Assembly: GCF_963921235.1 (NCBI RefSeq)
Contig: NC_086122.1
Span: forward strand, 26,970,001-27,034,000
Source of the DNA: Mobula hypostoma
Lineage: Eukaryota
Length of the DNA stretch: 64,000 nucleotides
Direction of reading: 5' to 3'
Below are positions 111-46,562 of this stretch, one piece after another. The notes under the pieces were generated by a model, which saw nothing but the letters and a program-made list of their open reading frames with translations, was not told where the DNA came from and did no database searches. Made by a program: the position numbers and the translations under genes. How positions within the stretch are numbered: the stretch's first letter is position 1; the number at the start of each line of letters is the position of its first letter.

Positions 111-1294
111 GGTCTGTTGATTATTCAGCAGATGCAAATGCGCGAAGCAAACAAAACTAACACTGCTGTTAGCAGATTTGATCTGTACACTCTATATGCC
201 CTCTAAAAATTCGTGGAATACTGCTTTTTATATCAGCTTGATGCCCAAAGCACAATAATCATACCTCCAGTCTGAGCCTACCTCATAATGCTGAAAATGG
301 CATCGCTACTGGGATGTGCTGGGGGTCATCTCCTAAGATTCCATACAGACTTTGCCCTCCACCCACTCAATTACCCTTCATCTCCCAATCCCACCTAAGC
401 TCGGCCCACAATCACGAGGCAGATGATACAATTATAGATCCTCTGTAATTAAATCATTGATCCCTGCCAGTCTTGGGACAGACTTTGGATTCCTTCATGG
501 CACTGGTATCACATTTCAGTGTAAGTGTGTTTCAGACCAGAGAAGTAATTTTAGCCTCAGTCATATCTAATTGATAGTCAGCAGGCTGATTTAATGACAT
601 TCTAGTTGTGGATCCTTTAGGGAGAACATTATCATACATTAATGAGGAGCACACTGGCAGTCACTGTTTGCATAATATCAGACTAAACCTTCTATATAAA
701 ATGGAAAGTGTGGTTGTATAAGTGGTAAGAGATGCTTAGAATGATTATTGTAAAACTATAATCTAATCCCAGAGTTTACATTATGTTTATTAAACAATAT
801 GAGCTTCACTAAAATAGTCTACAATGACTTTGATTCCTATGATTAGTTTATTGGCTTGTAATCAATGACAGGTGACCATTAAGCTCCGATTTTTCAACTT
901 CCATTTGACAGAGGGGTGTTCTTGTCATTATGATGCATAGCAATGGTGTGATTCATAAATGGCTTTAAAATTCCTGGGTATATATTGTATATACTAGGCC
1001 ACGATATAATAATTTACTCAGTAATTCACTCTTTGATCTTCCTTCAAACACTATATTCTGAACATGTGCTATGAAGAATAACAAAATATAAATGTTAACT
1101 GCTTTCCTCTCTCCATAGATGCTGTCCGACATGTTGAGTATTTCCATTCAATACAGTCTTTTACTGCTATTTTTCAGATATTTTACTTCTATTTTTAAAA
1201 TATTCTGAGACAGTGTAAGAGGTTTTGCAGATCTGGGTGACTTCTTCCAATTCATTGGCAAAGCAGATTTCTTCTCTGTGTTGTCTTTATTTCC

Positions 1295-3570: not shown

Positions 3571-6164
3571 TTTCCGCCTGTTTATTTACTTGGTGCTTTA
3601 GCTGAATTGGGGACTTCCATTTATTTTTTTCTTGTGTAGTAAATCCATTGCATCTCAGTATAACTTATGGTTTATTTCCTTCTGAAATGAATAATAATAA
3701 AAAGATTGAAAGTCCCTTTTTTAGCAAATGGGCAAAATATTTTCGATGGTCAGGTGTAAGAAACAGTTAAAGAAATTGTGCAAATGAATATTCTGCAAGG
3801 TGCAATTTTTTACTAGTGACAATGAAAATTAGCAGCCAGCCACTATAATAATTTAATGCTTCCTAAGCAGTTAATGAGTCATTTAGCTGGTAAAAATGCA
3901 GGAAAGTTAGCTCTACCATAATTACCGTGGTTGGAAGAGCAGGTCAGCAATGGCTGTGAAGAGTAACTAACCTCCTGAGAGAAACAAGCCAGAAGTAATT
4001 GTCTGATAAATTTTAAGGGCTCAGTACTATCCAGAGCAAAGAAGCATGCTTAATCAGCTCACTGTTTCCACTTTAAGCAGTCATACCTGTCATCACCAAC
4101 ACATCCAGAGTCCAGAATGCAGTGCAAGACTGGTAATTCTCCAAGTGTCTTTGACATCATCTTTTAAAAATGTGACTGCAGAAGGTGAATGAACTGACAT
4201 CTGCAAGGTCCCATTCTTGCCTTCATTTAACTCTTTGTTTCCATACTCAGATGCTGCTGGACCTGTTGAATATTTCCAGTATTTTCTGCTTATGTTTAAT
4301 ATTTCTACCTTTTGCAGTTTAAAAAAATTCAAACCAAATACTATCCTATAGTGGAAATACATTATCATTTCTCATTGACATTTTGTTAGATCTTGACACT
4401 AGCTATCTAATTCTACTGTGGTAATATAATGATTCAACATCGCTTTCTCAAGTGCGACAAATGGTGGCCTAGCTAATGTCATCAGCATCCTATAAAATAA
4501 ATGCTAATTAGCCTTCCCTATTGTGTTATACTGATTAAGTATTTATTATACTAATAAAGTACTTCAGTGGTCGGGAAGCACTTTGGGACGTCAGAAAAAG
4601 TTTACTCCTTATTTCTTAAAGTGGAGTTATGAACTTAAGTAGGAAAGTATCACGAAGGTAGATAGAGTTGCATGAGCACGACACATAAATTGTCCTCTCG
4701 ACTCTCACACTGTAATGATTTCAGCAGAGATTTTAAAGGGCAAAACCCACTACAGTAGGATGTCTCATTTTTCCTTTGAATTCTACTAAAGAAGTTTTGG
4801 GAACAGGATTCCAAGATGAAGCCGTGGCTGACTTCAGCTTGCTTTGAAGCTGTTTAGACCAGAAAAAGATTCTGAGATCTTTTAGATTCCCACTGTTTAA
4901 TGCTGAGATACATTAATGGTAATTAGAAAGTGATCTCTCCAGCTTTGTTTGACGTGAACTATTTCTGTAGAGTTTGTGTTTAAGTTAACATTAATTCAGT
5001 CATGTTCAGTCCTAATGCGTTTATGAAGAATGAGCCATCAGCAAATGCAACAATAGATGGACCTCTGAAAACTAATTACTGCTGATGCTGGAAGTTTGAA
5101 ACAGGAGCAGGAAATACTGGAAATAGTCAGCTGGTCATGCAAAGTATGTGGAAAGGGGAACAACATTAAGCTTTCATGTTAATGATTGTTCATTAGCTAA
5201 CGATCTTTGGTTGAGTGCCGATCTGGTTTTGTTGTTGATAGAGTTCGTGCTCCTTTCTGTAGCACCTGAATGTTGCAGCACTGATCCCTTAACCAGGTGA
5301 ATGCTAAGTGATGATGTACATTGATTAGAGAGTGGGGGTGGGGGGGTCATGATACATCAAAAGTAAACATATATGAAGCTAAGTTAAACTGAGCACCAAC
5401 ATTTCTGTTGCCTTTAACATATTTGGCGGGCTGACATCGTGGTGCAGGAAAAAATGTATTAAAATAACAAAAACATGAAGATCTCATGGGGTGGCAATTA
5501 GTCTCTAGTTACCTGTGTTAAACAGATATGAACATATCAAACTGACATCTGCCTATTCAATGGATGTTCACACATACAATGAGCACAGGGAGCCATCCCA
5601 TATTTATTCTCTTCCTCCCTCCCACTTATAAGAAAAATACATGTTTTTTTCTATTATGTTATAGAGCTTTAGATGTCCAAAGATTAATAAGTTGACTTGC
5701 TTCAGAGGGAAAGAAACTTTTGATAATTGCAAAATGACTTATCTACACAATATCTACTTCATGTGATGGGCTTTTGATATATACACATCTCCATAAAATA
5801 AAGCAAAATTCTTGAAACTTCCAGAGAGTTTAATCTTAGCTTTTGATTTAATAATGTGAGAAGTAACAAAATTCATTGTTGCTCTTTTCAACTGCCATCT
5901 TTACTTCCAGGTCAGTAAAAATTGTTCAGCATTAATTAATTTCATTAACTTATTGCCAGTGTAGGAACAGTACAGCAGGAGTCACAGCAGGGCGATGCTC
6001 ATAAGCACATATAATAGATGTTTCATGTTCAATCCTATTTGAATGTGCTGACTTTGTGTTTTATATTCTGTGTTTTCGCTTGTTACTTTTGTTGCCGTTT
6101 TCATGATTTATTTTTGCACATGGGAGAGATTGATGTTTTTTCTTTGAATGGGTTCCACGGTTCT

Positions 6165-6396
6165 TGGTGAACGCAGCAGGCCAGGCAGCATCTCTAGGAA
6201 GAGGTACAGTCGACGTTTCGGGCCGAGACCCTTCGTCCTGACCATCACTAGCTCTTCTTTCAGTTAGTCCTGACGAAGGGTCTCGGCCCGAAACGTCGAC
6301 TGTACCTCTTCCTATAGATGCTGCCTGGCCTGCTGCGTTCACCAGCAACTTTTATGTGTGTTGCTTGAATTTCCAGCATCTGCAGATTTCCTCGTG
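6165..6396 (+). mobile_element. Penelope-like pseudo-LTR fold-back mini-element
   Basis: 73-bp inverted arms 6165-6237 / 6272-6344 (1 mismatch); 13-bp TSD tcc(a/g)cggttcttg at 6154-6166 and 6397-6409; same pLTR sequence as the GIY-YIG-linked copy at 39590-40110. Confidence 0.85.
6265..6302 (+). ncRNA. Minimal type-I hammerhead ribozyme (intact core)
   Basis: tagtc-CTGACGA-a-ggg(tctcgg)ccc-GAAAC-GTC-gactg: stem I tagtc/gactg, extra A after A9, palindromic ACGT stem III, predicted cleavage after C6297. Confidence 0.8.
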
Positions 6397-6744
6397 TCCG
6401 CGGTTCTTGTTATATTTTTCGTAGCTGTCTGTGGGAAGACAAATCTCAGGGTTGCATACTGCATACATACTTTTATAAAAAGTATACTTTGAATGGGAGA
6501 CCCAGAGAGAAAAAAGCAGAATTCAAAAATGATATAGATAATGTAATAGCATCAACAATAAGGCCAGGGAACCCCAAAAACAGAAATGCGTCCTTTCCAT
6601 AGCAATCACCCCAGAGTGAAAACACATGATGCTAGAGATAACCAGAGAGACAAGCAGCATCTGTGGAGGGAGAAACAGAATTAACGTTTTGGGTTGGTGG
6701 CCTTTCACCACAACTCATTAGATTAGACGAAGCCTGATAACAAG

Positions 6745-31704: not shown

Positions 31705-32402
31705 TACAGATACAAAATTCCCTAAAACTGGCGTCACAGGTAGATAGGGTCGTAAAGAGAGCTTTTGGTACATTGGCCTTTATTAATCAACGTATTGAGT
31801 ATAAGAGCTGGGATGTTATGATGAGGTTGTGTAAGGCATTGGTGAGGCCGAATCTGGAGTATTGTGTTCAGTTTTGGTCACCAAGTTACAGGAAGGATAT
31901 TGATAAGGTTGAAAGAGTGCAGAGAAGGTTTACAAGGATGTTGCCGGGACTTGAGAAACTCAGTTACAGAGAACAGTTGAATAGGTTAGCACTTTATTCC
32001 CTGGAGTGTAGAAGAATGAGGGGGAGATTTGATAGAGGTATATAAAATTATGATGGGTATAGATAGAGTGAATGCAAGCAGGCTTTTTCTACTGAGGCAA
32101 GGGGAGAAAAAAAACAAGAGGACATGGGTTAAGGGTGAAGGGGGAAAAGTTTAAAGGGATAATTGCGGGTGGGGGGGGCTTCTTCACGCAGAGAGTGGTG
32201 GGAGTGTGGAATGAGCCGCCAGACGAGGTGGTAAATGTGGGTTCTTACATTTAAGAATAAATTGGACAGATACATGGATGGGAGGTGTATGGAGGGATAT
32301 GGTCCGTGTGCAGGTCAGTTGGACTAGGCAGAAAATGGTTCGGCACAGCCAAGAAGGGCCAAAAGGCCTGTTTCTGTGCTGTAGTTTTTCTGTGGTTTCT
32401 AT
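31705..32402 (+). mobile_element. CR1 LINE 3' portion
   Basis: ORF 31773-32045 ALVRPNLEYCVQFWSPSYRKDIDKVERVQRRFTRMLPGL; tail tttctgtggtttctatgg. Confidence 0.9.
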
Positions 32403-36264: not shown

Positions 36265-38080
36265 GAATTAGAATCAGAATCGGGTTTAATATCACTGGCA
36301 TATGTCTTGAAATTTGTTGGTTTTGTAGTAGCAGTACAATTCAATATATAACATTGAAAGGTGGGAGGAGAAGGTGGCAGCGCGCCTGTGTGTGCGCAGC
36401 CCTCCAGTGAAAAATGATATCGTATCTGTTAAATAGGGGCCATGGACAATTCTGATTTGATGGAGAATGGACGTGAAAGCACAGAGGAATATCTGGAGAA
36501 ATTTCTGAAACACCCGTTCGCTGCTGTTGTTACTGCGCGGTCGGGAATCTTTCGGAGGGAAGGCCTCAAAATACCCGGCCTTGCCTGCTTTTTGGCGACC
36601 GAGATTGAGGTCGAATCGTTCGGACAGAGATGGTGCTCAGTACTCGGTGTCAGAGAGCTGATCAGAGCTCGAAGTTTTCGGATGACTCAGAGTCGGACTG
36701 TGGTGGGCATGGCAGGGAGAGTTTTTCTTCCTTCTCCCGTCTGCGTGAGATGTGGGACATTTGAGAAACTTTGAACTTTACTGTGCTCCTGGACTTCTTC
36801 ATCAAGTTATGGTATTGTGCACTGTTGCAACTATATGTTATAATTATGTGGTTTTGTCAGTTTTTTCAGTCTTGGTCTGTGCTGTGTTTTGTGATATCAC
36901 ACCAGAGGAAATAATGTATCATTTCTTAATGCATGCATTACTAAATGACAATAAAAGAGGACTACGTGTCTTCATAATCTAATCTAATCTAATAGAGAAA
37001 AAGAGTTATGATTTACAGAGGGGAAGAAGCTGTTCCTGAATTGTACCAATGAGAACAAGGCATGACCTGGGTGATGGGGGTCCTTAATGATGGATGCTGC
37101 CCTTTTGAGGCATTGCACCTTGAAGATGTACTGGATACTACGGAGGCTAGTTTCCATGATGGAGCTAGCTAAGTTTACAACTTTCTGCAGCTTACTTCGA
37201 TCCTGTGCAGTAACCCCTCCACACTAGGCGGTGATGCAGCCAGCTGGAATGTTCTCCACAGTGCATCTGTAGAAATTTTCAGGTGTATTTGGAGACGTAC
37301 CAAATCTTCGCAAACTCCCAATGAAATAAAGCTGCTGTTGTGTCTTCTTTGTAGCTGCAGCAATAAGTTGGGTTCAGGTTAGATCCTCAAAAATATTGAC
37401 ACCCAGGAACTTGAAATTGCTCACTCTTTCCACTTCAGATCCCTCTATGAGGTCTGGTGTGTGTTCCCTCGTCTTACCCTTTCTGAAGTCCACAATCAGT
37501 TTTTCAGTCTTGCTGATGTTGCGTGCAGGTTACTATGACACCACTCAACTGGCTGATATTTCTCACTCCTGTACGGCCTCACGGATTCATCTGAAATTCG
37601 GCTGTATCATCAGCAAGTTTATAGGTGGCACTTGATCTGTGCCTGGCCACACAGTCATGGGTGTAGAGAGAGTAGAGCAGTGGGCCAAGCACACATCCCT
37701 GAGGTGCACCAGTGTTGATTGTCAGCGAGGTGGTGATATTGTTTCTGATCCACACAGATTGTGGTCTTCCAGTTAGGAAGTCGAGGATCCAGTTGCAGAG
37801 CGAGGTAGAGAGGCCCATGTTCTGGAGCTTTTCGATCAGAACAGTAGGAATGATTGTGTTAAATGCTGAGCTGTAGTCAATAAGCAGCATCCTGACATAG
37901 GTATTTGTATTGTCCAGCTGATACAAGGCCACAAGAAGTGCCAATGAGATCGTGTCCTCTGTAGACCTATTGTGGCGATAGGCAAATTGGAGTGGGTTTA
38001 GGTCTTTGCTGAGATTGGAATTAATTCTAGGCAAAGTACCTCTCAAAGCACTTCATCACCATAGATGTGAGTGCTACTGG
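36265..38080 (-). mobile_element. Rex1/Babar LINE (RT to tail), with insert at 36365-36993
   Basis: ORF 37579-38046(-) [14 protein letters not shown]...[16 protein letters not shown]...[20 protein letters not shown]...KLADDT. Confidence 0.9.
36365..36993 (+). mobile_element. Non-autonomous retroelement (CpG-rich head, (ctaat)n tail)
   Basis: Starts gaggagaaggtggcagcgcg; ends gacaataaaag...taatctaatctaatctaat; interrupts the Rex1 tail. Confidence 0.55.
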
Positions 38081-40110: not shown

Positions 40111-40979
40111 GCATGCTACATGGTCTGCTGAATTGCTCCAGCATTTTGTGTGCCTTAAGAAAATTCAAACATTGGAAATCAGAAATTGAGCAGGTTTACA
40201 TACAAAACTCTCTTTTAGCCTGCACTGTCATCTTATTTCATCCCTCCTTTGTATTCTCAACTCCCTTTCTCCATGTTCTGCATCTTTAAAATTCTTTTAA
40301 CTTCTTCCATTTTAAATCTGTTTCTCTCCCCAGAGATGTTACTTTAACCCAATAACTGAAGAGAGCTGGCTCAATTCATTCCAAGGGTCCATGTCCCTAT
40401 GTTTCTATGGTAACATGGAAGGAACACACGCTTGCAATGCCAGATGTCTGTCCCTTTATGTCTGACACCACATCATCTCTGGAATAGGTTAGAATCTCCT
40501 GTCAGTCTTGGGTCCAAGTAATTAATTTCCTTCTCAGTCTAGAGCTGTGGATTCTTACCTGCAGACAAAGAAAGTGGACAGTGGATATTGCTGGTATCCT
40601 TGAACTGAGCTGGAAGGGTTCGCAAGCAACTTCAGGAATGTTTACTTATAGAGTGCAGCAAAGCTGGAGGCGAAGTAGCTGTTCTTTCTCATAGCAGCCA
40701 GTGGGTCAAACGACTGGGAGGCATGTGCACAGCTGTAGATTTTTAAGGCTTGCAGCAGTGTACAACTACACTTTCCTGATCTGGTTGCAGCATCAATTCA
40801 CATATGGCAATCACCCAGCGGACGTGTATGCACTGAAACCCAGGAGTGTTCACAGATTCAGCAATGTCACGTGTGTGGGTGTGGGACATGCATTACCAAT
40901 TTCTGTTGCTTTTAAAAAATTAGACCATCACAAGAAAATCATGGAAATACATTGCTTAAGTTTAAAAAAAAAAGCAAGC

Positions 40980-41096
40980 GGGTTTCATGCTTATCTCCGT
41001 CGTGGACGTCCCAAGCCCAGCTGGAAATGGTGGAGGGTTGGGCAGAGGACCAGCAACTCTGTCATTTAAAAACCTAGACCTACAGAAATAGCAACA
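40980..41096 (+). mobile_element. 5' half of a non-autonomous RTE-derived element with a twister-like motif
   Basis: ctcc...gtcccaagccc...ggtggagggttgggc...agcaact...taaaaacc...acagaaa, resembling RTE (Perere-3/SR3-type) 5' ends. Confidence 0.6.
40986..41044 (+). ncRNA. Twister ribozyme-like motif (degenerate)
   Basis: UAU-CUCC-GU...GUCCCAAGCC (41008-41017)...GGUG-GAGGG (41029-41037); P1 and P4 imperfect. Confidence 0.45.
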
Positions 41097-44052
41097 TAGA
41101 GTCATAGTCATAGAAAAGTACAGCACAGAAACAGGCCATTTGGCCCATCTAGTCCATGCCAAAACCATTTAAACTGCCTGTTCCCATCGCTGTTCAATGG
41201 GACCATAGCCCTTCAAACCTCTACCATCCATGCACCAATCCAAACTTTGCTTAAATGTTGAAGCTGAGCACCACTCGTGCTGGCAGCTCATTCCACACTC
41301 TCACAGCCCTCTGGGTGAAGATGTTTCTCCTCATTTTTCCCTTAAATTCTTTGCCTTTTACCCTTAACCCATGTCCTCTGATGGTAGTCCTGCCGTACCT
41401 CAGTAGAAAAAGCCTGCTTGCATTTACTCTATCTACACCCTTAATAATTTCATATACCTCTATCAAATCTCCTCTCAATCTTCTACATTCTAAGGAATAA
41501 AGTCCTGATCTATTCAATCTTTCCTCATAACTGAGGCCCTCCAGTCCCAGCAACATCCTTGTAATCTTTGGACACCTCCTCACTTTTTTTTAATATACTG
41601 TAGTTCTATTTTTGAATGTTTTTTTTAAAAAATCTGTTCAATATATGTGATTGATTTACTTGTTTATTTATTATTATTATTTTTTAAATTTTATTTATTA
41701 TTATTGTTTTTTTTCTCTGCTAGGTTATGTATAGCATTGAACTGCTGCTGCTAAGTTAACAAATTTCACGTCATATGCTGGTGATAATAAACCTGATTCT
41801 GATTCTCAATTTTTCTCTATACTCTTTCAATCTTACTTACATCTTTCCTGTAGGTAGGTGACCAAAACAGCAAACAATATTTCAAATCCCATCTTCTGTA
41901 CTCAATATTTAGATCTATGAAGGCAGTGTGCCCAAAGCTTTCTTTATGACCCTATCTACCTGTGTCGTAATTTTCAATGAATTATGGACCTGTATTCCCA
42001 GATCCCTTTGTTCTACCATACTCCTCAGTGCCCTTCTCTGTGTAAGACCTGCCCTGGCTGGTCCTACTGAAGTGCCACACCTCGCACTTGTCTGCATTAA
42101 ATTCCATCTGCCATTTTTCAACCCATTTTTCCAACTGATCTAGACCCCTCTGCAAGTCATGATAGCCTTTCTCACTGTCCATTACACCCCCAGTCCTGGT
42201 GTCATCCGCGAATTTGACATCGGTGACAAACAACGACAGACCTTGCACCGATCCCTGTGGCACTCTACTAGTCACAAGCCTCCAGTCAGAGAGGCAACTC
42301 TCTACTCCCACTTTCTGACTTCTCCCACAAAGCCAATGTCTGATCCAATTTACTACCTCGTCCTGAATGCTGAGCTACTGAACCTTCTTGACCAGCCTCC
42401 CATGTGGGACCTTGTCGAATGCCTTCCTAAAGTCCGTGTAGACAACATCCACTGCCTTGTCTTCATCCACTTTCCTGGTAACTTTCTCAAAACACTCTGT
42501 AAGATTGGATAGACACGACCTACCATACAAGAAGCTGTGGTGACAATCCTTAATTAGTCCATGTCTATCCAAATACTTGTATATCCAGTTCCTTAGAGTA
42601 TCTTCCAATGACTTTCACACAACTTTTGTCAGACTCACTGGCTTATAATTTCCTGGTTTATGTTTACAGCCTTTCTTAAATACTTTGGCTATCCACCAAT
42701 CCTCTGGTACCTCTCCCGTCATTGAGGATATTTTAAATATCTCTGCTTGGGCCCCAGCAATTTCTGCACTTGCCTCCTGTAGGGTCCGAGGGAGCATCTT
42801 GTCAGGCCCTGGGGACCTATCCACCCTGATCTGCCTCAGGACAGCAAACACCTCCTCCTCTGTCATCTGTATAGGGTCCATGAAGTCAATGCCGCTTTGC
42901 CTCACCTCTATTAACTCTTTTGTTCCTACCTGCCTATACCTGCTATGCACCTCCTTATTTTTCTTAACCAGGACCTTACTATCCCTTGAAAACCAAGGTT
43001 CCTTACACTTGTTATCTTTACCTTTTATTCCAACAGGCACATACAAGCTTTGTACTTTCAAAATTTCACTTTGAAGGTCTCCCACTTACCAAGTATACAG
43101 AAAACAGCCTGTCCCAATCCACATTTGTCAGATCATTTCTGATACTGTGATACTGTAATTTCCTTTGGGATCAATAAAGTATCTATATATCTATATCAAC
43201 AAAATTGGCCTTTCTCCAATTTAGAACCTCAACTCGAGGACCAGATATATCATTTTGCATAATTACTTTGATACTAATGGCATTGTGATCACTAGGTGCA
43301 AAGTATTCTCCTACACAAACTTCTGTCACCTGCCCTGTCTCATTCCCTAATAGCAGATCAAGTTTCACACACTCTCTTTTTGGGACTTCTGTGCACTGAT
43401 TAAAGAAACTTTCCTGAACACATTTGACAAACTCTATCCCATCTAGTCCTTTTACAGTATAGGAGTCCCAGTCAATATGTGGAAAGCTAAAATCACCGAC
43501 TATAACAACCTTCTGTTTCTTGCAACAGTCTGCGATCTCTCCACAAATTTGTTATTCTAAATTCCTCGGACTGTTGGGTGGTCTGTAATATAGCCCCATT
43601 AATGTGGCCATACCTTTCTTTTCCCTCACTAGACGACTTCTCCAGTATGGTGTGATGGAGCACTGTTGTGACATTTCCCCTGACTAATAACACCACCCCT
43701 CCTCCTTTAATCCCTCCTGCTCTGTCATGTCTAAAATGACAGGACCCCAGCTGTTGAGCTGCCGGTGCTGTCCCTTCTGTAGCCCTCACTAAAAGCTACA
43801 ATATCATAATTCCAGATGTTGATCCACGCCCTAAGCTCATCCATCTTTCCTACAATACTTCTTTCATTGAAAGATACACAGCTCAGGAAACTCGTTCCAC
43901 CATGCTCAATGTTTTGATTCTTGACTTTGTCTGAGGTCTTACCAACATCTGTCTCCACAACCTCTCCACTGGCTGTTGTGACACTCTGGTTCCCAAGACC
44001 CTGCAACTCTAGTTTAAACCCCACCGTACAGCACAAGGAGACCTTCCCGCTA
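41093..44052 (-). mobile_element. CR1 LINE, decayed ORF2 (APE endonuclease plus RT) with a Rex1 tail nested at ~41570-41806
   Basis: ELRAWINIWNYDIV, DRAGGIKGGGV, LDLLLGNE...SDHNAI, SPGPD..PR.L.E, NYKPVSLT, DFRKAFDKVPHGRL, VPQGSV, KFADDT. Confidence 0.9.
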
Positions 44053-44223
44053 GGAAGCTCCAATGACCTCATCCCTGGGAGAGTAAGGATCTTCACCTAG
44101 AAGACAAATGATGGGCGGCACTGGGGGACAACTTGAACAACTGGCCCAGATCAGAGGACTCTGGTGAGCTGCCGTTGACGGTCAATGTCCCAGTAGGGGT
44201 GATGGGCTTAAGTCAGTAAGTAA
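44053..44223 (+). mobile_element. 3' half of the RTE-derived element
   Basis: Translates WGQLEQLAQIRGLW*AAVDGQCPSRG, like RTE C-termini (W.ELE..AQDR..WR..V.GLC); taagt-type tail. Confidence 0.7.
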
Positions 44224-44599
44224 TCAAGCCTGCCTCTTCATTGCGTCACTTGGTCCAAACGACACTTCTATACCATTCCTCATCAGCTGACTTTGCAACT
44301 TATTGGCATAGCGTAGAAACAAAAAGAGAAATTAAATCCTGGCACGTAAAGACAAATAAAAAACATTCTCAGAAGTTCCAGTCCAGTTCCTGAGGCTGAT
44401 AGAACAAGGCATATTTGAATGGGAGATTTGCCTGTCCTATGCACTGTATGTCAACTACAGTTAGAAACACATGCGATTACCTTTGAATATATTTTGTGAA
44501 TTTCCATTCATTGTATAAGCTGGCAGTTTCTTCCACAGGATGGTGGCTTTCTGTGAAAAAGAAAAGCAGTCTTCCAAAACCCATCATGTTCTTTGGTTC

Positions 44600-44810
44600 T
44601 CCCGACTTACCCAATACTTCAGCAACTTCTTTCAGGACTTTGGGATGTACTCTATCTGGTCCAGGTGACTTATCCATCTTAAGACTTTTCAGTTTGCTTG
44701 GCACTTTTTCCTTTGTAATAGCAATGGCACCCACTCCTGCTCTCTGACACTCTCCGACCTCTGGCATACAGCTAATATCTTCCACAGTAAAGACTGAGGC
44801 AAAGTACCAC
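44600..44810 (-). mobile_element. CR1 ORF2 internal fragment
   Basis: YFASVFTVED...ITKEKV..KLKSLKMDKSPGPD.VHPKVLKEVA. Confidence 0.85.
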
Positions 44811-45059
44811 GTGGCACAGACTAATCTTCTCATCATCTTTCATGCTTCAACCAAGCTTTTGTAATATCACCGTTTTCACACGAGCAACAACAAAGTTTGG
44901 TATTTTACTGCTACTGTGTTATCGATGGACTTTTGAATTATCTACAGTCGTTATGGGCTTTTAAGGTATCTGTTATCATGCTCAAGATGATTGTTGTGAT
45001 GCGTCTTGTGTGGTAGTGTAGTGGGTAGTGCTTGTCACTCTCGCTTTCAGCTTCCACCG

Positions 45060-45445: not shown

Positions 45446-46562
45446 ATTGAATTGACTTTGTTACTTACATCCTTCATATACAAAGTACATGAGGAGTAAA
45501 AATCTTTATATTACATCTCCATCTAAATGTGCAATTTATAGTAATTTGTAATAAATAATGTGTAAAACAGGACAGTTAATATAACATAGAAATATAATTG
45601 TATCAGCATGAATTAATCAGTCTGATGGCCTGGTGGAAGAAGCTGTCCCGGAGCTTGTTGGTTCTGGCTTTTATGCTGTGGTACCGTTTCCCGGATGGTG
45701 GCAGCTGGAACAGTTAGTAGTTGGGGTGACTCGGGTCCCCAGTGATCCTTTGGACCTTTTTTACGCACCTGTCTTTGTAAATGTTCTGAACAGTGGAAAG
45801 TTCACATCTTCAGTTGCGCTGGACTGTCCACACTACTCTCTGCAGAGTCTTGCGATTGAGGGAAGTACAGTTCCCATAGCAAGCAGTGATGCAGCCAGTC
45901 AGGATGCTCTCAATTGTGTAGAAAGTTCTTAGGATTTGGGGACTCATACCAAACTTCTTCAACCATCTGAGGTGAAAGAGGTGCTGTTGTGCCTTTTTCA
46001 CCACACAGCCAATATGTACAGACCATGTGAGAGCCTCGATGATGTGTATGCCGAGGAACTTAAAGCTGTTCGCGCTCTCAACCCCAGATCCATTGATGTC
46101 AACAAGGGCTAGCCTGTCTCCATTCCTCCTGTAGTCCACAATCAGCTCCTTCGATTTTGAGACATTGAGTGAGAGGTTGTTTTCTTGACACCACTGTGTA
46201 GACTTCTTCTCTCTAGGCTGCCTCATTATTATTTGAGATTAGATCAATCAGTGTAGTATCATCAGCAAATTTAATTAGCAGATTGGAGCTGTGGGTGACG
46301 ACACAGTCATGGATATACAGAGAGTAAAGGAGGGGGACGAGGATACAACCCTGAGGGGCAACTGTGTGGAGGGACAAAGGAGCAGAGGTGAGGGAGCCCA
46401 CTCTTACCACCTGCGTGCAGGTCCAGCTACACAAGACAGGGTGCAGATCGAGGTCTCTGAGTTTCTTATTGAGCCTGGAGGGAATTATGGTGTTGAATAC
46501 TCAACTGTAGTCCAAAAACAGCATTCTCACATAAGCATCCTTCTTCTCCAGATGTTTAAGGT
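45446..46562 (-). mobile_element. Rex1/Babar LINE (RT to tail)
   Basis: APQGCIL.PLLYSLY.HDC...KFADDTT; WCQENNLSLNVSK.KELIVDYRR...FKFLG.HI...IESILTGCITACYG. Confidence 0.9.

What the first reader, a model, noticed from the sequence alone, without database searches (positions are those of the whole stretch)
40975..44229. Twister-like ribozyme at the head of a short RTE-derived element split by a 3-kb CR1
Seen: 40992-41044 reads UAU-CUCC-GU-cgugga-c-GUCCCAAGCC-cag...GGUG-GAGGG-uugggc, followed by agcaac...taaaaacc. Removing the CR1 (41093-44052) joins this to 44053-44223, which encodes an RTE C-terminus and a taagt tail, giving a ~290-bp element; caagc occurs on both sides. Established: GUCCCAAGCC and GAGGG are the pseudoknot-forming signatures of twister ribozymes, and twisters process the 5' ends of RTE-clade elements such as Schistosoma Perere-3. 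Inference: a twister-headed non-autonomous RTE family. This copy is imperfect (UAU for UAA, a U.U mismatch in P2, poor P1/P4), so it may be dead or a structural variant.
Basis: partly seen in the sequence, partly recalled or inferred. Interest (0 to 1): 0.75.

Follow-up and report, generated by a model that had tools for sequence, protein, structure and literature searches.

The report
Dead twister-headed mini RTE, CR1-split
This is an old, worn-out copy of a short jumping element built from the two ends of an RTE-type LINE; it begins where a twister self-cutting RNA would cut and was later split by a CR1 insertion, so it is a relic of a design known from blood flukes, not a working ribozyme.

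Summary
Window 40993-41041 carries the twister core blocks, and 44053-44223 carries an RTE ORF C-terminus plus a GTAA-type tail. A minus-strand CR1 lies between them.

The resemblance is homology, not chance. A covariance model built only from metagenomic RTE 5' ends hits the window once, at 40993-41074 (51.3 bits, E 3e-11), starting at the post-cleavage A. A second model, covering only the module downstream of the twister and so independent of the pattern used to find those loci, hits 41042-41098 (E 2e-6). The tail matches the 3' ends of the same full-length elements (80% over 80 nt).

Full-length relatives have the layout twister, hairpin, one APE/RT ORF of about 1000 aa, then (GTAA)n. They include a Schistosoma mekongi copy whose twister passes Rfam's threshold, which links this element to the published Perere-3 system.

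This copy is dead. P4 keeps 1 of 4 pairs, P2 has a U.U mismatch, UAA has become UAU, and Rfam gives no twister match even at E<=10, whereas intact P3-less relatives score 40-48 bits.

The element more likely starts at A40993.

The scan has already noted this family several times elsewhere in this genome. I could not fetch other copies from this genome.

The parts
40985..40992 (+). Candidate left target-site duplication, TCATGCTT, abutting the twister cleavage site (U40992|A40993)
   Evidence: It matches TCAAGCCT at 44224-44231 in 6 of 8 positions, abutting both element ends. The chance of this at a fixed register is about 0.004, so support is weak to moderate. Intact relatives have perfect duplications in exactly this position.
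40993..41041 (+). Decayed P3-less type-P1 twister ribozyme relic: AU-CUCC-GUC...GUCCCAAGCC...GGUG-GAGGG-UUGG
   Evidence: Model R1 hits at 51.3 bits, E 3.4e-11, over its full length, starting at A40993. Pair check: P2 3/4, P4 1/4, T1 3/3, T2 G-C plus U.G. Rfam gives no twister match at E<=10.
41042..41095 (+). Conserved post-twister 5'-UTR module of the RTE lineage: hairpin (CAGAG/CUCUG here), then UUUAAAAA, then CUACAGAAAUAGCAA
   Evidence: Model R2 was built without any base of the pattern used to find the loci. It hits 41042-41098 at 25.2 bits, E 2.3e-6, the only significant hit in the window. The hairpin covaries among relatives.
41096..44052 (-). 5'-truncated, decayed CR1-like LINE inserted into the mini-element. 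Its 3' end with CTATGA-type repeats lies at about 41096; its 5' end is uncertain (44033-44073).
   Evidence: The minus-strand ORFs have APE/RT-like sequence. A second copy lies at 31930-32388, 76% identical.
44053..44212 (+). Remnant of the last ~50 codons of the RTE ORF (..PGRVRIFT*K.. / ..GQLEQLAQIRGLW*AAVDGQCPSRGDGLK), broken by stops and a frameshift
   Evidence: tblastx matches the C-termini of the L019, L005 and L033 ORFs (E 4e-5 to 2e-3). blastn gives 80% over 80 nt to L080/L081 (E 6e-16) and 71% over 101 nt to Littorina L083. The best protein C-termini are P0012 and P0010.
44213..44223 (+). Former stop codon (TCA, TAA in relatives) and a short TAAG/GTAA microsatellite tail
   Evidence: It aligns with the GGGCATAAGTAAGTAAGT end of L080/L081 and with the (GTAA)n tail of L019. 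GTAA repeats at the Perere-3 3' boundary are reported in PMC8501958.
44224..44231 (+). Candidate right target-site duplication, TCAAGCCT
   Evidence: see the left duplication.

Best explanation
Window 40993-44223 is one old retroposon copy interrupted by a later CR1 insertion.

The retroposon is an internally deleted, non-coding derivative of an RTE-clade LINE of the Perere-3 type, about 274 bp long. It keeps the roughly 103-nt 5' UTR (a P3-less type-P1 twister ribozyme, a conserved hairpin and a CUACAGAAA box) and the last roughly 170 nt (ORF C-terminus, stop codon and GTAA repeats).

Proposed mechanism, by step:
1. A source copy is read through from an upstream promoter.
2. Its twister cuts just 5' of the AA, so the RNA starts at that A.
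3. The APE/RT protein of an autonomous RTE recognises the shared 3' end and copies the RNA into a new site by target-primed reverse transcription.
4. The new copy therefore starts at the cleavage site, next to the target-site duplication, and must borrow the 5' strand of P1 from its new flank.

Shown here: both halves are homologous to the two ends of the same full-length elements; homology begins at A40993; intact relatives have perfect duplications abutting the AA. Inferred: self-cleavage, mobilisation in trans, and membership of a multi-copy family in this genome.

The copy in the window is dead. It has drifted to about 68-69% identity with intact relatives, has lost P4 and one P2 pair, and was then split at element position ~103 by a minus-strand CR1.
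For: - Head: R1 hits at 51.3 bits, E 3.4e-11, over the full model, starting at A40993, and is the only hit in 64 kb. R2, independent of the pattern used to find the loci, hits 41042-41098 at E 2.3e-6.
- Tail: blastn gives 80% over 80 nt to L080/L081. tblastx matches ORF C-termini. The alignment runs through the stop codon and the GTAA tail.
- Both halves hit the two ends of one Littorina element in a single search. They are equally diverged from L080: 68.3% and 69.1%.
- Full-length relatives have the layout twister, hairpin, a single APE+RVT_1+DUF6451 ORF of about 1000 aa, then a microsatellite.
- Rfam twister-P1 scores relatives at 72.7 bits in S. mekongi, 68.1 in L033 and 40-48 in P3-less copies.
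- P4 and the hairpin covary among relatives.
- Perfect duplications abut the AA in L080 (12 bp) and in mini-elements of 169-366 bp.
- The published precedent is PMC8501958.
- This copy's defects are listed.
Against: - The existence of a 240-300-bp family here therefore rests on unverified scan notes.
- The CR1 sits at or near the head/tail junction, so a one-off deletion cannot be excluded.
- The proposed duplication matches only 6 of 8 positions.
- The CR1 5' boundary is not fixed.
- R1's E-value is inflated, because the loci used to build it were found with a pattern that this copy matches. R2 was built to control for that.
Confidence: 0.85

Rival explanations
1. One-off rearrangement. A longer or full-length twister-headed RTE copy lost its interior through a deletion linked to, or independent of, the CR1 insertion. 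On this reading the two halves are not a copy of a mobile mini-family.
For: The CR1 lies exactly between the 5'-UTR part and the last ~170 nt. No uninterrupted copy from this genome was seen here.
Against: No RTE ORF sequence borders the CR1 on either side. Replacing a ~2.9-kb interior with a 2.96-kb CR1 needs a coincidence. Short head-plus-tail elements with duplications exist in other organisms. Scan notes report 239-302-bp copies elsewhere in this genome (unverified).
Confidence: 0.1
2. Chance resemblance. The head would be the 3' coding part of a 5'-truncated RTE, with frame 2 reading RRGRPKPSW, like the GRPxxxW motif of LINE C-termini. The twister-like strings would then be a by-product of those codons.
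For: Frame 2 of the head is open for 30 codons and runs in phase into the frame of the tail that holds LAQ[D]RGLW.
Against: phmmer of that peptide against 1.84 billion proteins found only immunoglobulin-domain chance hits and no LINE protein. The genuine GRxRxxW..DRxxWR motif lies wholly inside the tail. The head aligns base for base with non-coding 5' UTRs of full-length RTEs upstream of their ORFs.
Confidence: 0.02
3. A still-active structural variant of twister, with an alternative P4 (UGG/CCA with an 11-nt loop) and tolerated changes.
For: The T1 pseudoknot and both core strings are intact. A 3-bp alternative P4 can be drawn.
Against: Rfam gives no twister match at E<=10 in a 251-nt search, while intact P3-less relatives score 40-48 bits. 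P2 has a U.U mismatch, the A after the cleavage-site A is U, the L1 GCC is GUC, and the A-rich junction is altered. All differences look like drift from the relatives' sequence. The tail shows equal decay, with stops in the ORF remnant.
Confidence: 0.03

Closest known systems
T-variant twister ribozymes at the 5' end of Perere-3 (RTE clade) in Schistosoma mansoni (Liu et al. 2021, PMC8501958)
   Same: - The same ribozyme sequence blocks: CUCC-G, GUCCCAAGCC and G-GAGGG-UUGG.
- The same position at the very 5' end of an RTE element.
- The element starts at the A after the cut, next to the target-site duplication.
[quoted passage not shown] - A Schistosoma mekongi relative fetched here has the same twister, hairpin and ORF layout.
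   Different: The host here is a vertebrate (a ray according to scan notes; not tested by me). The twister lacks P3. The element has lost its whole ORF apart from about 50 codons. This copy is mutated beyond function and split by a CR1.
P3-less type-P1 twister such as the rice Osa-1-4 ribozyme (Rfam RF03160, twister-P1)
   Same: The same minimal architecture (P1-P2-P4 with T1/T2 pseudoknots, no P3 or P5) is seen in the intact relatives L019, L027, L080 and L083, which match RF03160 at 40-48 bits.
   Different: The window copy fails the model altogether. The relatives fall below Rfam's gathering score of 67.2 because P3 is absent.
HDV-like ribozymes heading R2, L1Tc, Baggins and some RTE elements, and ribozyme-headed SINEs (reviewed in PMC6765202)
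   Same: The logic is the same: a 5' self-cleaving ribozyme frees a promoter-less retrotransposon RNA from a read-through transcript and defines its 5' end.
   Different: The ribozyme class differs (twister, not HDV-like or hammerhead).
LINE-derived non-autonomous elements that share the 3' end of a partner LINE (e.g. eel UnaSINE/UnaL2; the SINE tails discussed in PMC5786205)
   Same: A short element that keeps the partner LINE's 3' end, which its reverse transcriptase recognises.
   Different: The head is the LINE's own ribozyme-bearing 5' UTR, not a tRNA, 5S or 7SL pol III promoter. Transcription must therefore come from outside the element.

Membership tests
Twister ribozyme, type P1 (RF03160) | Conserved core strings: L4 GUCCCAAGCC and GAGGG, in the right order and spacing | tested here: met
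   present once at 41008-41037 and in 0 of 100 shuffles.
Twister ribozyme, type P1 (RF03160) | U-A cleavage step followed by a second A (UAA) | tested here: not met
   The copy reads U40992-A40993-U40994 (UAU). 25 of the 32 aligned relatives have AA after the cut.
Twister ribozyme, type P1 (RF03160) | P2 helix of 4 pairs and P4 helix of at least 3-4 pairs | tested here: not met
   P2 keeps 3 of 4 pairs (U40996.U41031). P4 keeps 1 of 4 in the canonical register. Relatives pair at 96-98% with covariation in P4.
Twister ribozyme, type P1 (RF03160) | Pseudoknots T1 (CCC/GGG) and T2 (GC/GC) | tested here: inconclusive
   T1 keeps 3 of 3 pairs. T2 is G-C plus a U.G wobble, because GCC has become GUC.
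Twister ribozyme, type P1 (RF03160) | Score against the Rfam covariance model | tested here: not met
   There is no match at the gathering score in the window and none at E<=10 in 40900-41150. Intact relatives score 40.4-72.7 bits.
Twister ribozyme, type P1 (RF03160) | Site-specific self-cleavage | not testable with these tools
   This needs an in vitro transcription and cleavage assay.
Perere-3-type twister-headed RTE retrotransposon | 5' UTR homologous to the lineage's twister, hairpin and CUACAGAAA module | tested here: met
   R1 gives E 3.4e-11. The independent model R2 gives E 2.3e-6. The same module is present in S. mekongi, Littorina and the ENA copies.
Perere-3-type twister-headed RTE retrotransposon | 3' end homologous to the RTE ORF C-terminus plus a GTAA-type microsatellite | tested here: met
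Perere-3-type twister-headed RTE retrotransposon | Target-site duplication directly abutting the cleavage-site A | tested here: inconclusive
   TCATGCTT and TCAAGCCT match in 6 of 8 positions and abut both ends. The duplication is perfect in the relatives L080, L016, L032 and L063.
Perere-3-type twister-headed RTE retrotransposon | Single ORF with APE and RT domains | tested here: not met
   Only about 50 broken C-terminal codons remain. The copy is therefore a non-autonomous derivative, not an RTE proper.
Internally deleted (SINE-like) non-autonomous RTE family | Many dispersed copies in the genome sharing the same head/tail junction | not testable with these tools
Scan notes list about 8 similar copies in this genome (unverified).

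The most novel reading that the evidence does not exclude
The twister, the covarying hairpin and the GUAAAA..CUACRGAAA box may form one conserved 5' module of a single RTE lineage. That lineage's ORFs are 60-74% identical across flatworms, snails, lancelets, ray-finned fishes and a lungfish, and its 5' and 3' ends turn up in this genome (a ray, according to scan notes). This would point to repeated horizontal transfer. The lineage has also repeatedly spawned short head-plus-tail parasites whose only 'promoter' is read-through transcription followed by ribozyme cutting. On this reading the hairpin has a function of its own, such as cap-independent translation or RNA protection after the cut.
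Probability: 0.45. Interest if true: 0.6.

Novelty: new member of a known kind. Interest (0 to 1): 0.4.

Why it matters
As a locus it matters little: it is a dead relic inside repeat-rich DNA.

As a data point it extends the twister-plus-RTE partnership, shown experimentally only in Schistosoma mansoni, in two ways. It places the partnership in a vertebrate genome, and it shows a short non-coding derivative form.

The comparison set gathered here also shows that the same 5' module heads intact, recently inserted RTE copies in snails and in other unidentified organisms. That gives twister ribozymes a clear and widespread biological role in animals. It also gives annotators a simple rule: RTE-derived elements of this lineage begin at the AA after the twister cut.

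Tried and rejected
- **Read laying.** I tried to lay reads on 40900-44300 to look for uninterrupted paralogues and CR1-free orthologues. Those places were never sent as a query afterwards. They were only part of the target when models R1 and R2 and local BLAST databases scanned the whole window.
- **Head as coding sequence.** The idea that the head is RTE coding sequence (RRGRPKPSW) was tested by phmmer and rejected.
- **Second copy in the window.** I looked with pattern search, BLAST and the covariance models; there is none.
- **Self-fold of the head.** The MFE fold of the head is no better than shuffles (z = 0.56). This is uninformative for a pseudoknotted ribozyme.
- **CAAGC duplication.** It is at chance level.
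- **Paper supplements.** The supplements of PMC8501958 are not held, so its vertebrate T-variants could not be checked.
- **Findings search by sequence.** It returned nothing.
- **Exact-product look-up.** A look-up of the ORF spanning the head found nothing on record.
- **Large genomes.** The lungfish and reedfish loci could not be fetched because the files were too large.
- **Joining the halves.** The two halves were never joined into one sequence for any search. They were compared separately, and the joined step was left out.
Full report
**What is there**

40992-41043 reads U|AU CUCC GUC GUGGAC GUCCCAAGCC CAGCUGGAAAU GGUG GAGGG UUGGGC.

Between 41096 and about 44052 lies a CR1-like LINE on the minus strand. 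All its APE/RT-like ORFs are on that strand. Its 3' end is fixed by comparison with a second copy at 31930-32388.

44053-44223 translates, with stops and one frameshift, to ..PGRVRIFT*K.. and ..GQLEQLAQIRGLW*AAVDGQCPSRGDGLK. It ends in TCAG-TAAG-TAA.

Rfam finds no family in the window at gathering scores. It finds no twister even at E<=10 in a 251-nt search around the head. The head's MFE fold is no better than shuffles.

**Is the twister likeness chance?**

[quoted passage not shown] The window copy shares the universally conserved twister strings. It also shares the lineage-specific P2 (CUCC) and the P1 3' strand (UUGG).

A 25-base, three-block pattern derived from these blocks occurs once in the window and in none of 100 shuffles. 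The analytic expectation is about 1e-7 per window.

A rival reading occurred to me. In frame 2 the head reads RRGRPKPSW, like the GRPxxxW motif of LINE C-termini, and it runs in phase into the tail's frame. I tested it with phmmer against 1.84 billion proteins. That returned only immunoglobulin-domain chance hits and no LINE protein. The true GRxRxxW..DRxxWR motif turned out to lie entirely inside the tail. I rejected this rival.

**Relatives**

That used the only call, so I never sent those places as a query afterwards.

I then scanned the metagenome collection with the three-block pattern and obtained 78 loci. About half carry a 43-53-nt P3-less twister: aa|CUCCGCC..GG-UCCCAAGC-CC..GAAAGGAG-GAGGG-UUGG. 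The rest have a P3 stem. All are followed by a hairpin (consensus GCGUGGGG-CUAGYAA-CCCCAC), then CCGUAAAA, then CUACRGAAA.

Several contigs are whole elements of about 3.2 kb. L019, L027 and L047 (and L033, whose contig ends inside the ORF) each have the twister at the very start and then one ORF of 1015-1031 aa with Exo_endo_phos, RVT_1 and DUF6451 domains. Where the 3' end was read, a microsatellite follows; L019 ends in (GTAA)n.

Rfam twister-P1 scores these relatives as follows:
- 68.1 bits for L033, above the gathering score of 67.2.
- 41.5 bits (E 1e-6) for the P3-less L019 and L027.

Across 32 distinct P3-less 5' ends, the structure pairs in 95.7% of cells. P4 shows a G-C to U-A swap in 16 of 32 sequences, and six hairpin pairs change on both sides. 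No shuffle and no slid control reaches these values.

**Tests on the window**

Model R1 covers the twister plus the hairpin and was built from those 32 sequences without the window. It hits the window once, at 40993-41074, at 51.3 bits and E 3.4e-11, over the full model. The hit starts at A40993, the base that aligns with the first A after the cleavage site.

The loci had been found with a pattern that the window matches, so this E-value is inflated. I therefore built model R2 from only the 58 nt downstream of that pattern. R2 hits 41042-41098 at 25.2 bits and E 2.3e-6. The next best hit has E 0.65. This second test is independent of how the loci were found.

The tail gives these matches:
- ORF C-termini of L019, L005 and L033 by tblastx (E 4e-5 to 2e-3).
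- The 3' ends of L080/L081 at 80% over 80 nt (E 6e-16).
- An alignment that runs through the stop codon into the GTAA tail.

One Littorina saxatilis element (L083) hits both window halves in a single search: the head at 84% over 50 nt and the tail at 71% over 101 nt. The head and tail are equally far from L080, at 68.3% and 69.1% identity. That fits one element of one age.

**Link to the published system, and breadth**

The L019 ORF is 60-74% identical to proteins that sources name from Schistosoma species, Littorina, Batillaria, Branchiostoma, loaches, a goby, reedfish and lungfish.

- **Schistosoma mekongi (L082).** It has a P3-bearing twister at 72.7 bits (above gathering), directly followed by the R2 module (48 bits) and a 1007-aa ORF.
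- **Littorina (L083) and two ENA contigs (L080, L081).** They have the P3-less version.
- **L080.** It has a perfect 12-bp duplication, CCATACATCTTT, abutting the AA on one side and the GTAAGT end on the other.
- **A loach copy (L079).** It keeps the R2 module, but Rfam reports no twister there at E<=0.01.

Short elements of 169-366 bp occur in one metagenome. They have a twister head, no ORF, an (ATGG)n tail and 8-10-bp duplications abutting the AA. Their 3' ends resemble that of the full-length L047. So the head-plus-tail design is not unique to this genome.

**State of this copy**

Measured against its relatives, the copy has:
- AU for AA after the cut.
- GUC for GCC, which weakens T2 to G-C plus U.G.
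- A one-base loss and substitutions that leave P4 with 1 of 4 pairs. A 3-bp alternative with an enlarged loop can be drawn.
- A U.U mismatch in P2.
- An altered A-rich junction.
- Stops and a frameshift in the ORF remnant.

The downstream hairpin survives as CAGAG/CUCUG in a register shifted by one base. I take the ribozyme to be dead.

**Boundaries**

Homology starts at A40993. TCATGCTT (40985-40992) and TCAAGCCT (44224-44231) match in 6 of 8 positions and abut both ends, as the ribozyme-processing model predicts. The support is modest.

The head runs to about 41095. The CR1 5' end, and therefore the start of the tail, cannot be fixed better than 44033-44073.

That step was left out.

**What remains open**

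I could not examine any other copy from this genome. Whether this is a member of a mobile mini-family or a one-off deletion therefore rests on two things: unverified scan notes that list about eight copies of 239-302 bp elsewhere in the genome, and the analogous mini-elements in other organisms.

In the library I searched, the only paper linking twister to RTE is the Schistosoma study. That paper mentions vertebrate T-variants but not their context.

**Verdict**

This is a new member of a known kind. The locus itself is a dead relic, and the scan has already found the family several times on other DNA of this genome.

Noticed in passing
P0007-P0126; loci L079-L083: RTE ORFs of this twister-headed lineage are 60-74% identical between Schistosoma species, snails (Littorina, Batillaria), Branchiostoma, loaches, a goby, reedfish and lungfish. 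That is unusually high across phyla and suggests horizontal transfer.
   Followed up: partly
A3 columns 62-87; L019:51-83, L080:1096-1128; window 41042-41072: A hairpin directly after the twister covaries: six pairs change on both sides. Its outer GGG/CCC pairs overlap the P1 3' strand (UUGG), so P1 and the extended hairpin may be alternative structures. Its function is unknown.
   Followed up: partly
L016, L020, L026, L032, L061, L063, L077 (metagenome Ga0081606): A family of 169-366-bp twister-headed elements without an ORF, ending in (ATGG)n, with 8-10-bp target-site duplications abutting the AA. Their last ~40 nt resemble the 3' end of the full-length L047.
   Followed up: partly
L079:1330-1420 (Paramisgurnus dabryanus): A loach RTE with an intact 1000-aa ORF keeps the post-twister hairpin module (R2, 26.9 bits). 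Rfam reports no twister at E<=0.01 in front of it, so the twister is either decayed or replaced by a different 5' structure.
   Followed up: no
window 41118-41127 and 44026-44035: The same 10-mer, GTACAGCACA, lies on the plus strand near both ends of the CR1 insert. It is unexplained; it could be microhomology or chance.
   Followed up: no
window 31930-32388; 37579-38046 (-); 44477-44836 (-); 45810-46226 (-): Other LINE debris: a second CR1 3' end (76% identical to the insert), an RVT_1 ORF, a CR1-like fragment right after the element, and an ORF with an ALKBH8_N match.
   Followed up: partly
window 6154-6409: Scan notes flag a hammerhead ribozyme family on Penelope pseudo-LTRs and a fold-back ribozyme element here. 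I did not examine them. Rfam gave no gathering-level hit anywhere in the window.
   Followed up: no
L082:19-90 and 250-321 (-): Two identical sub-threshold mir-297 matches (37.9 bits; gathering score 90) lie upstream of the Schistosoma mekongi element. They are probably a repeat.
   Followed up: no
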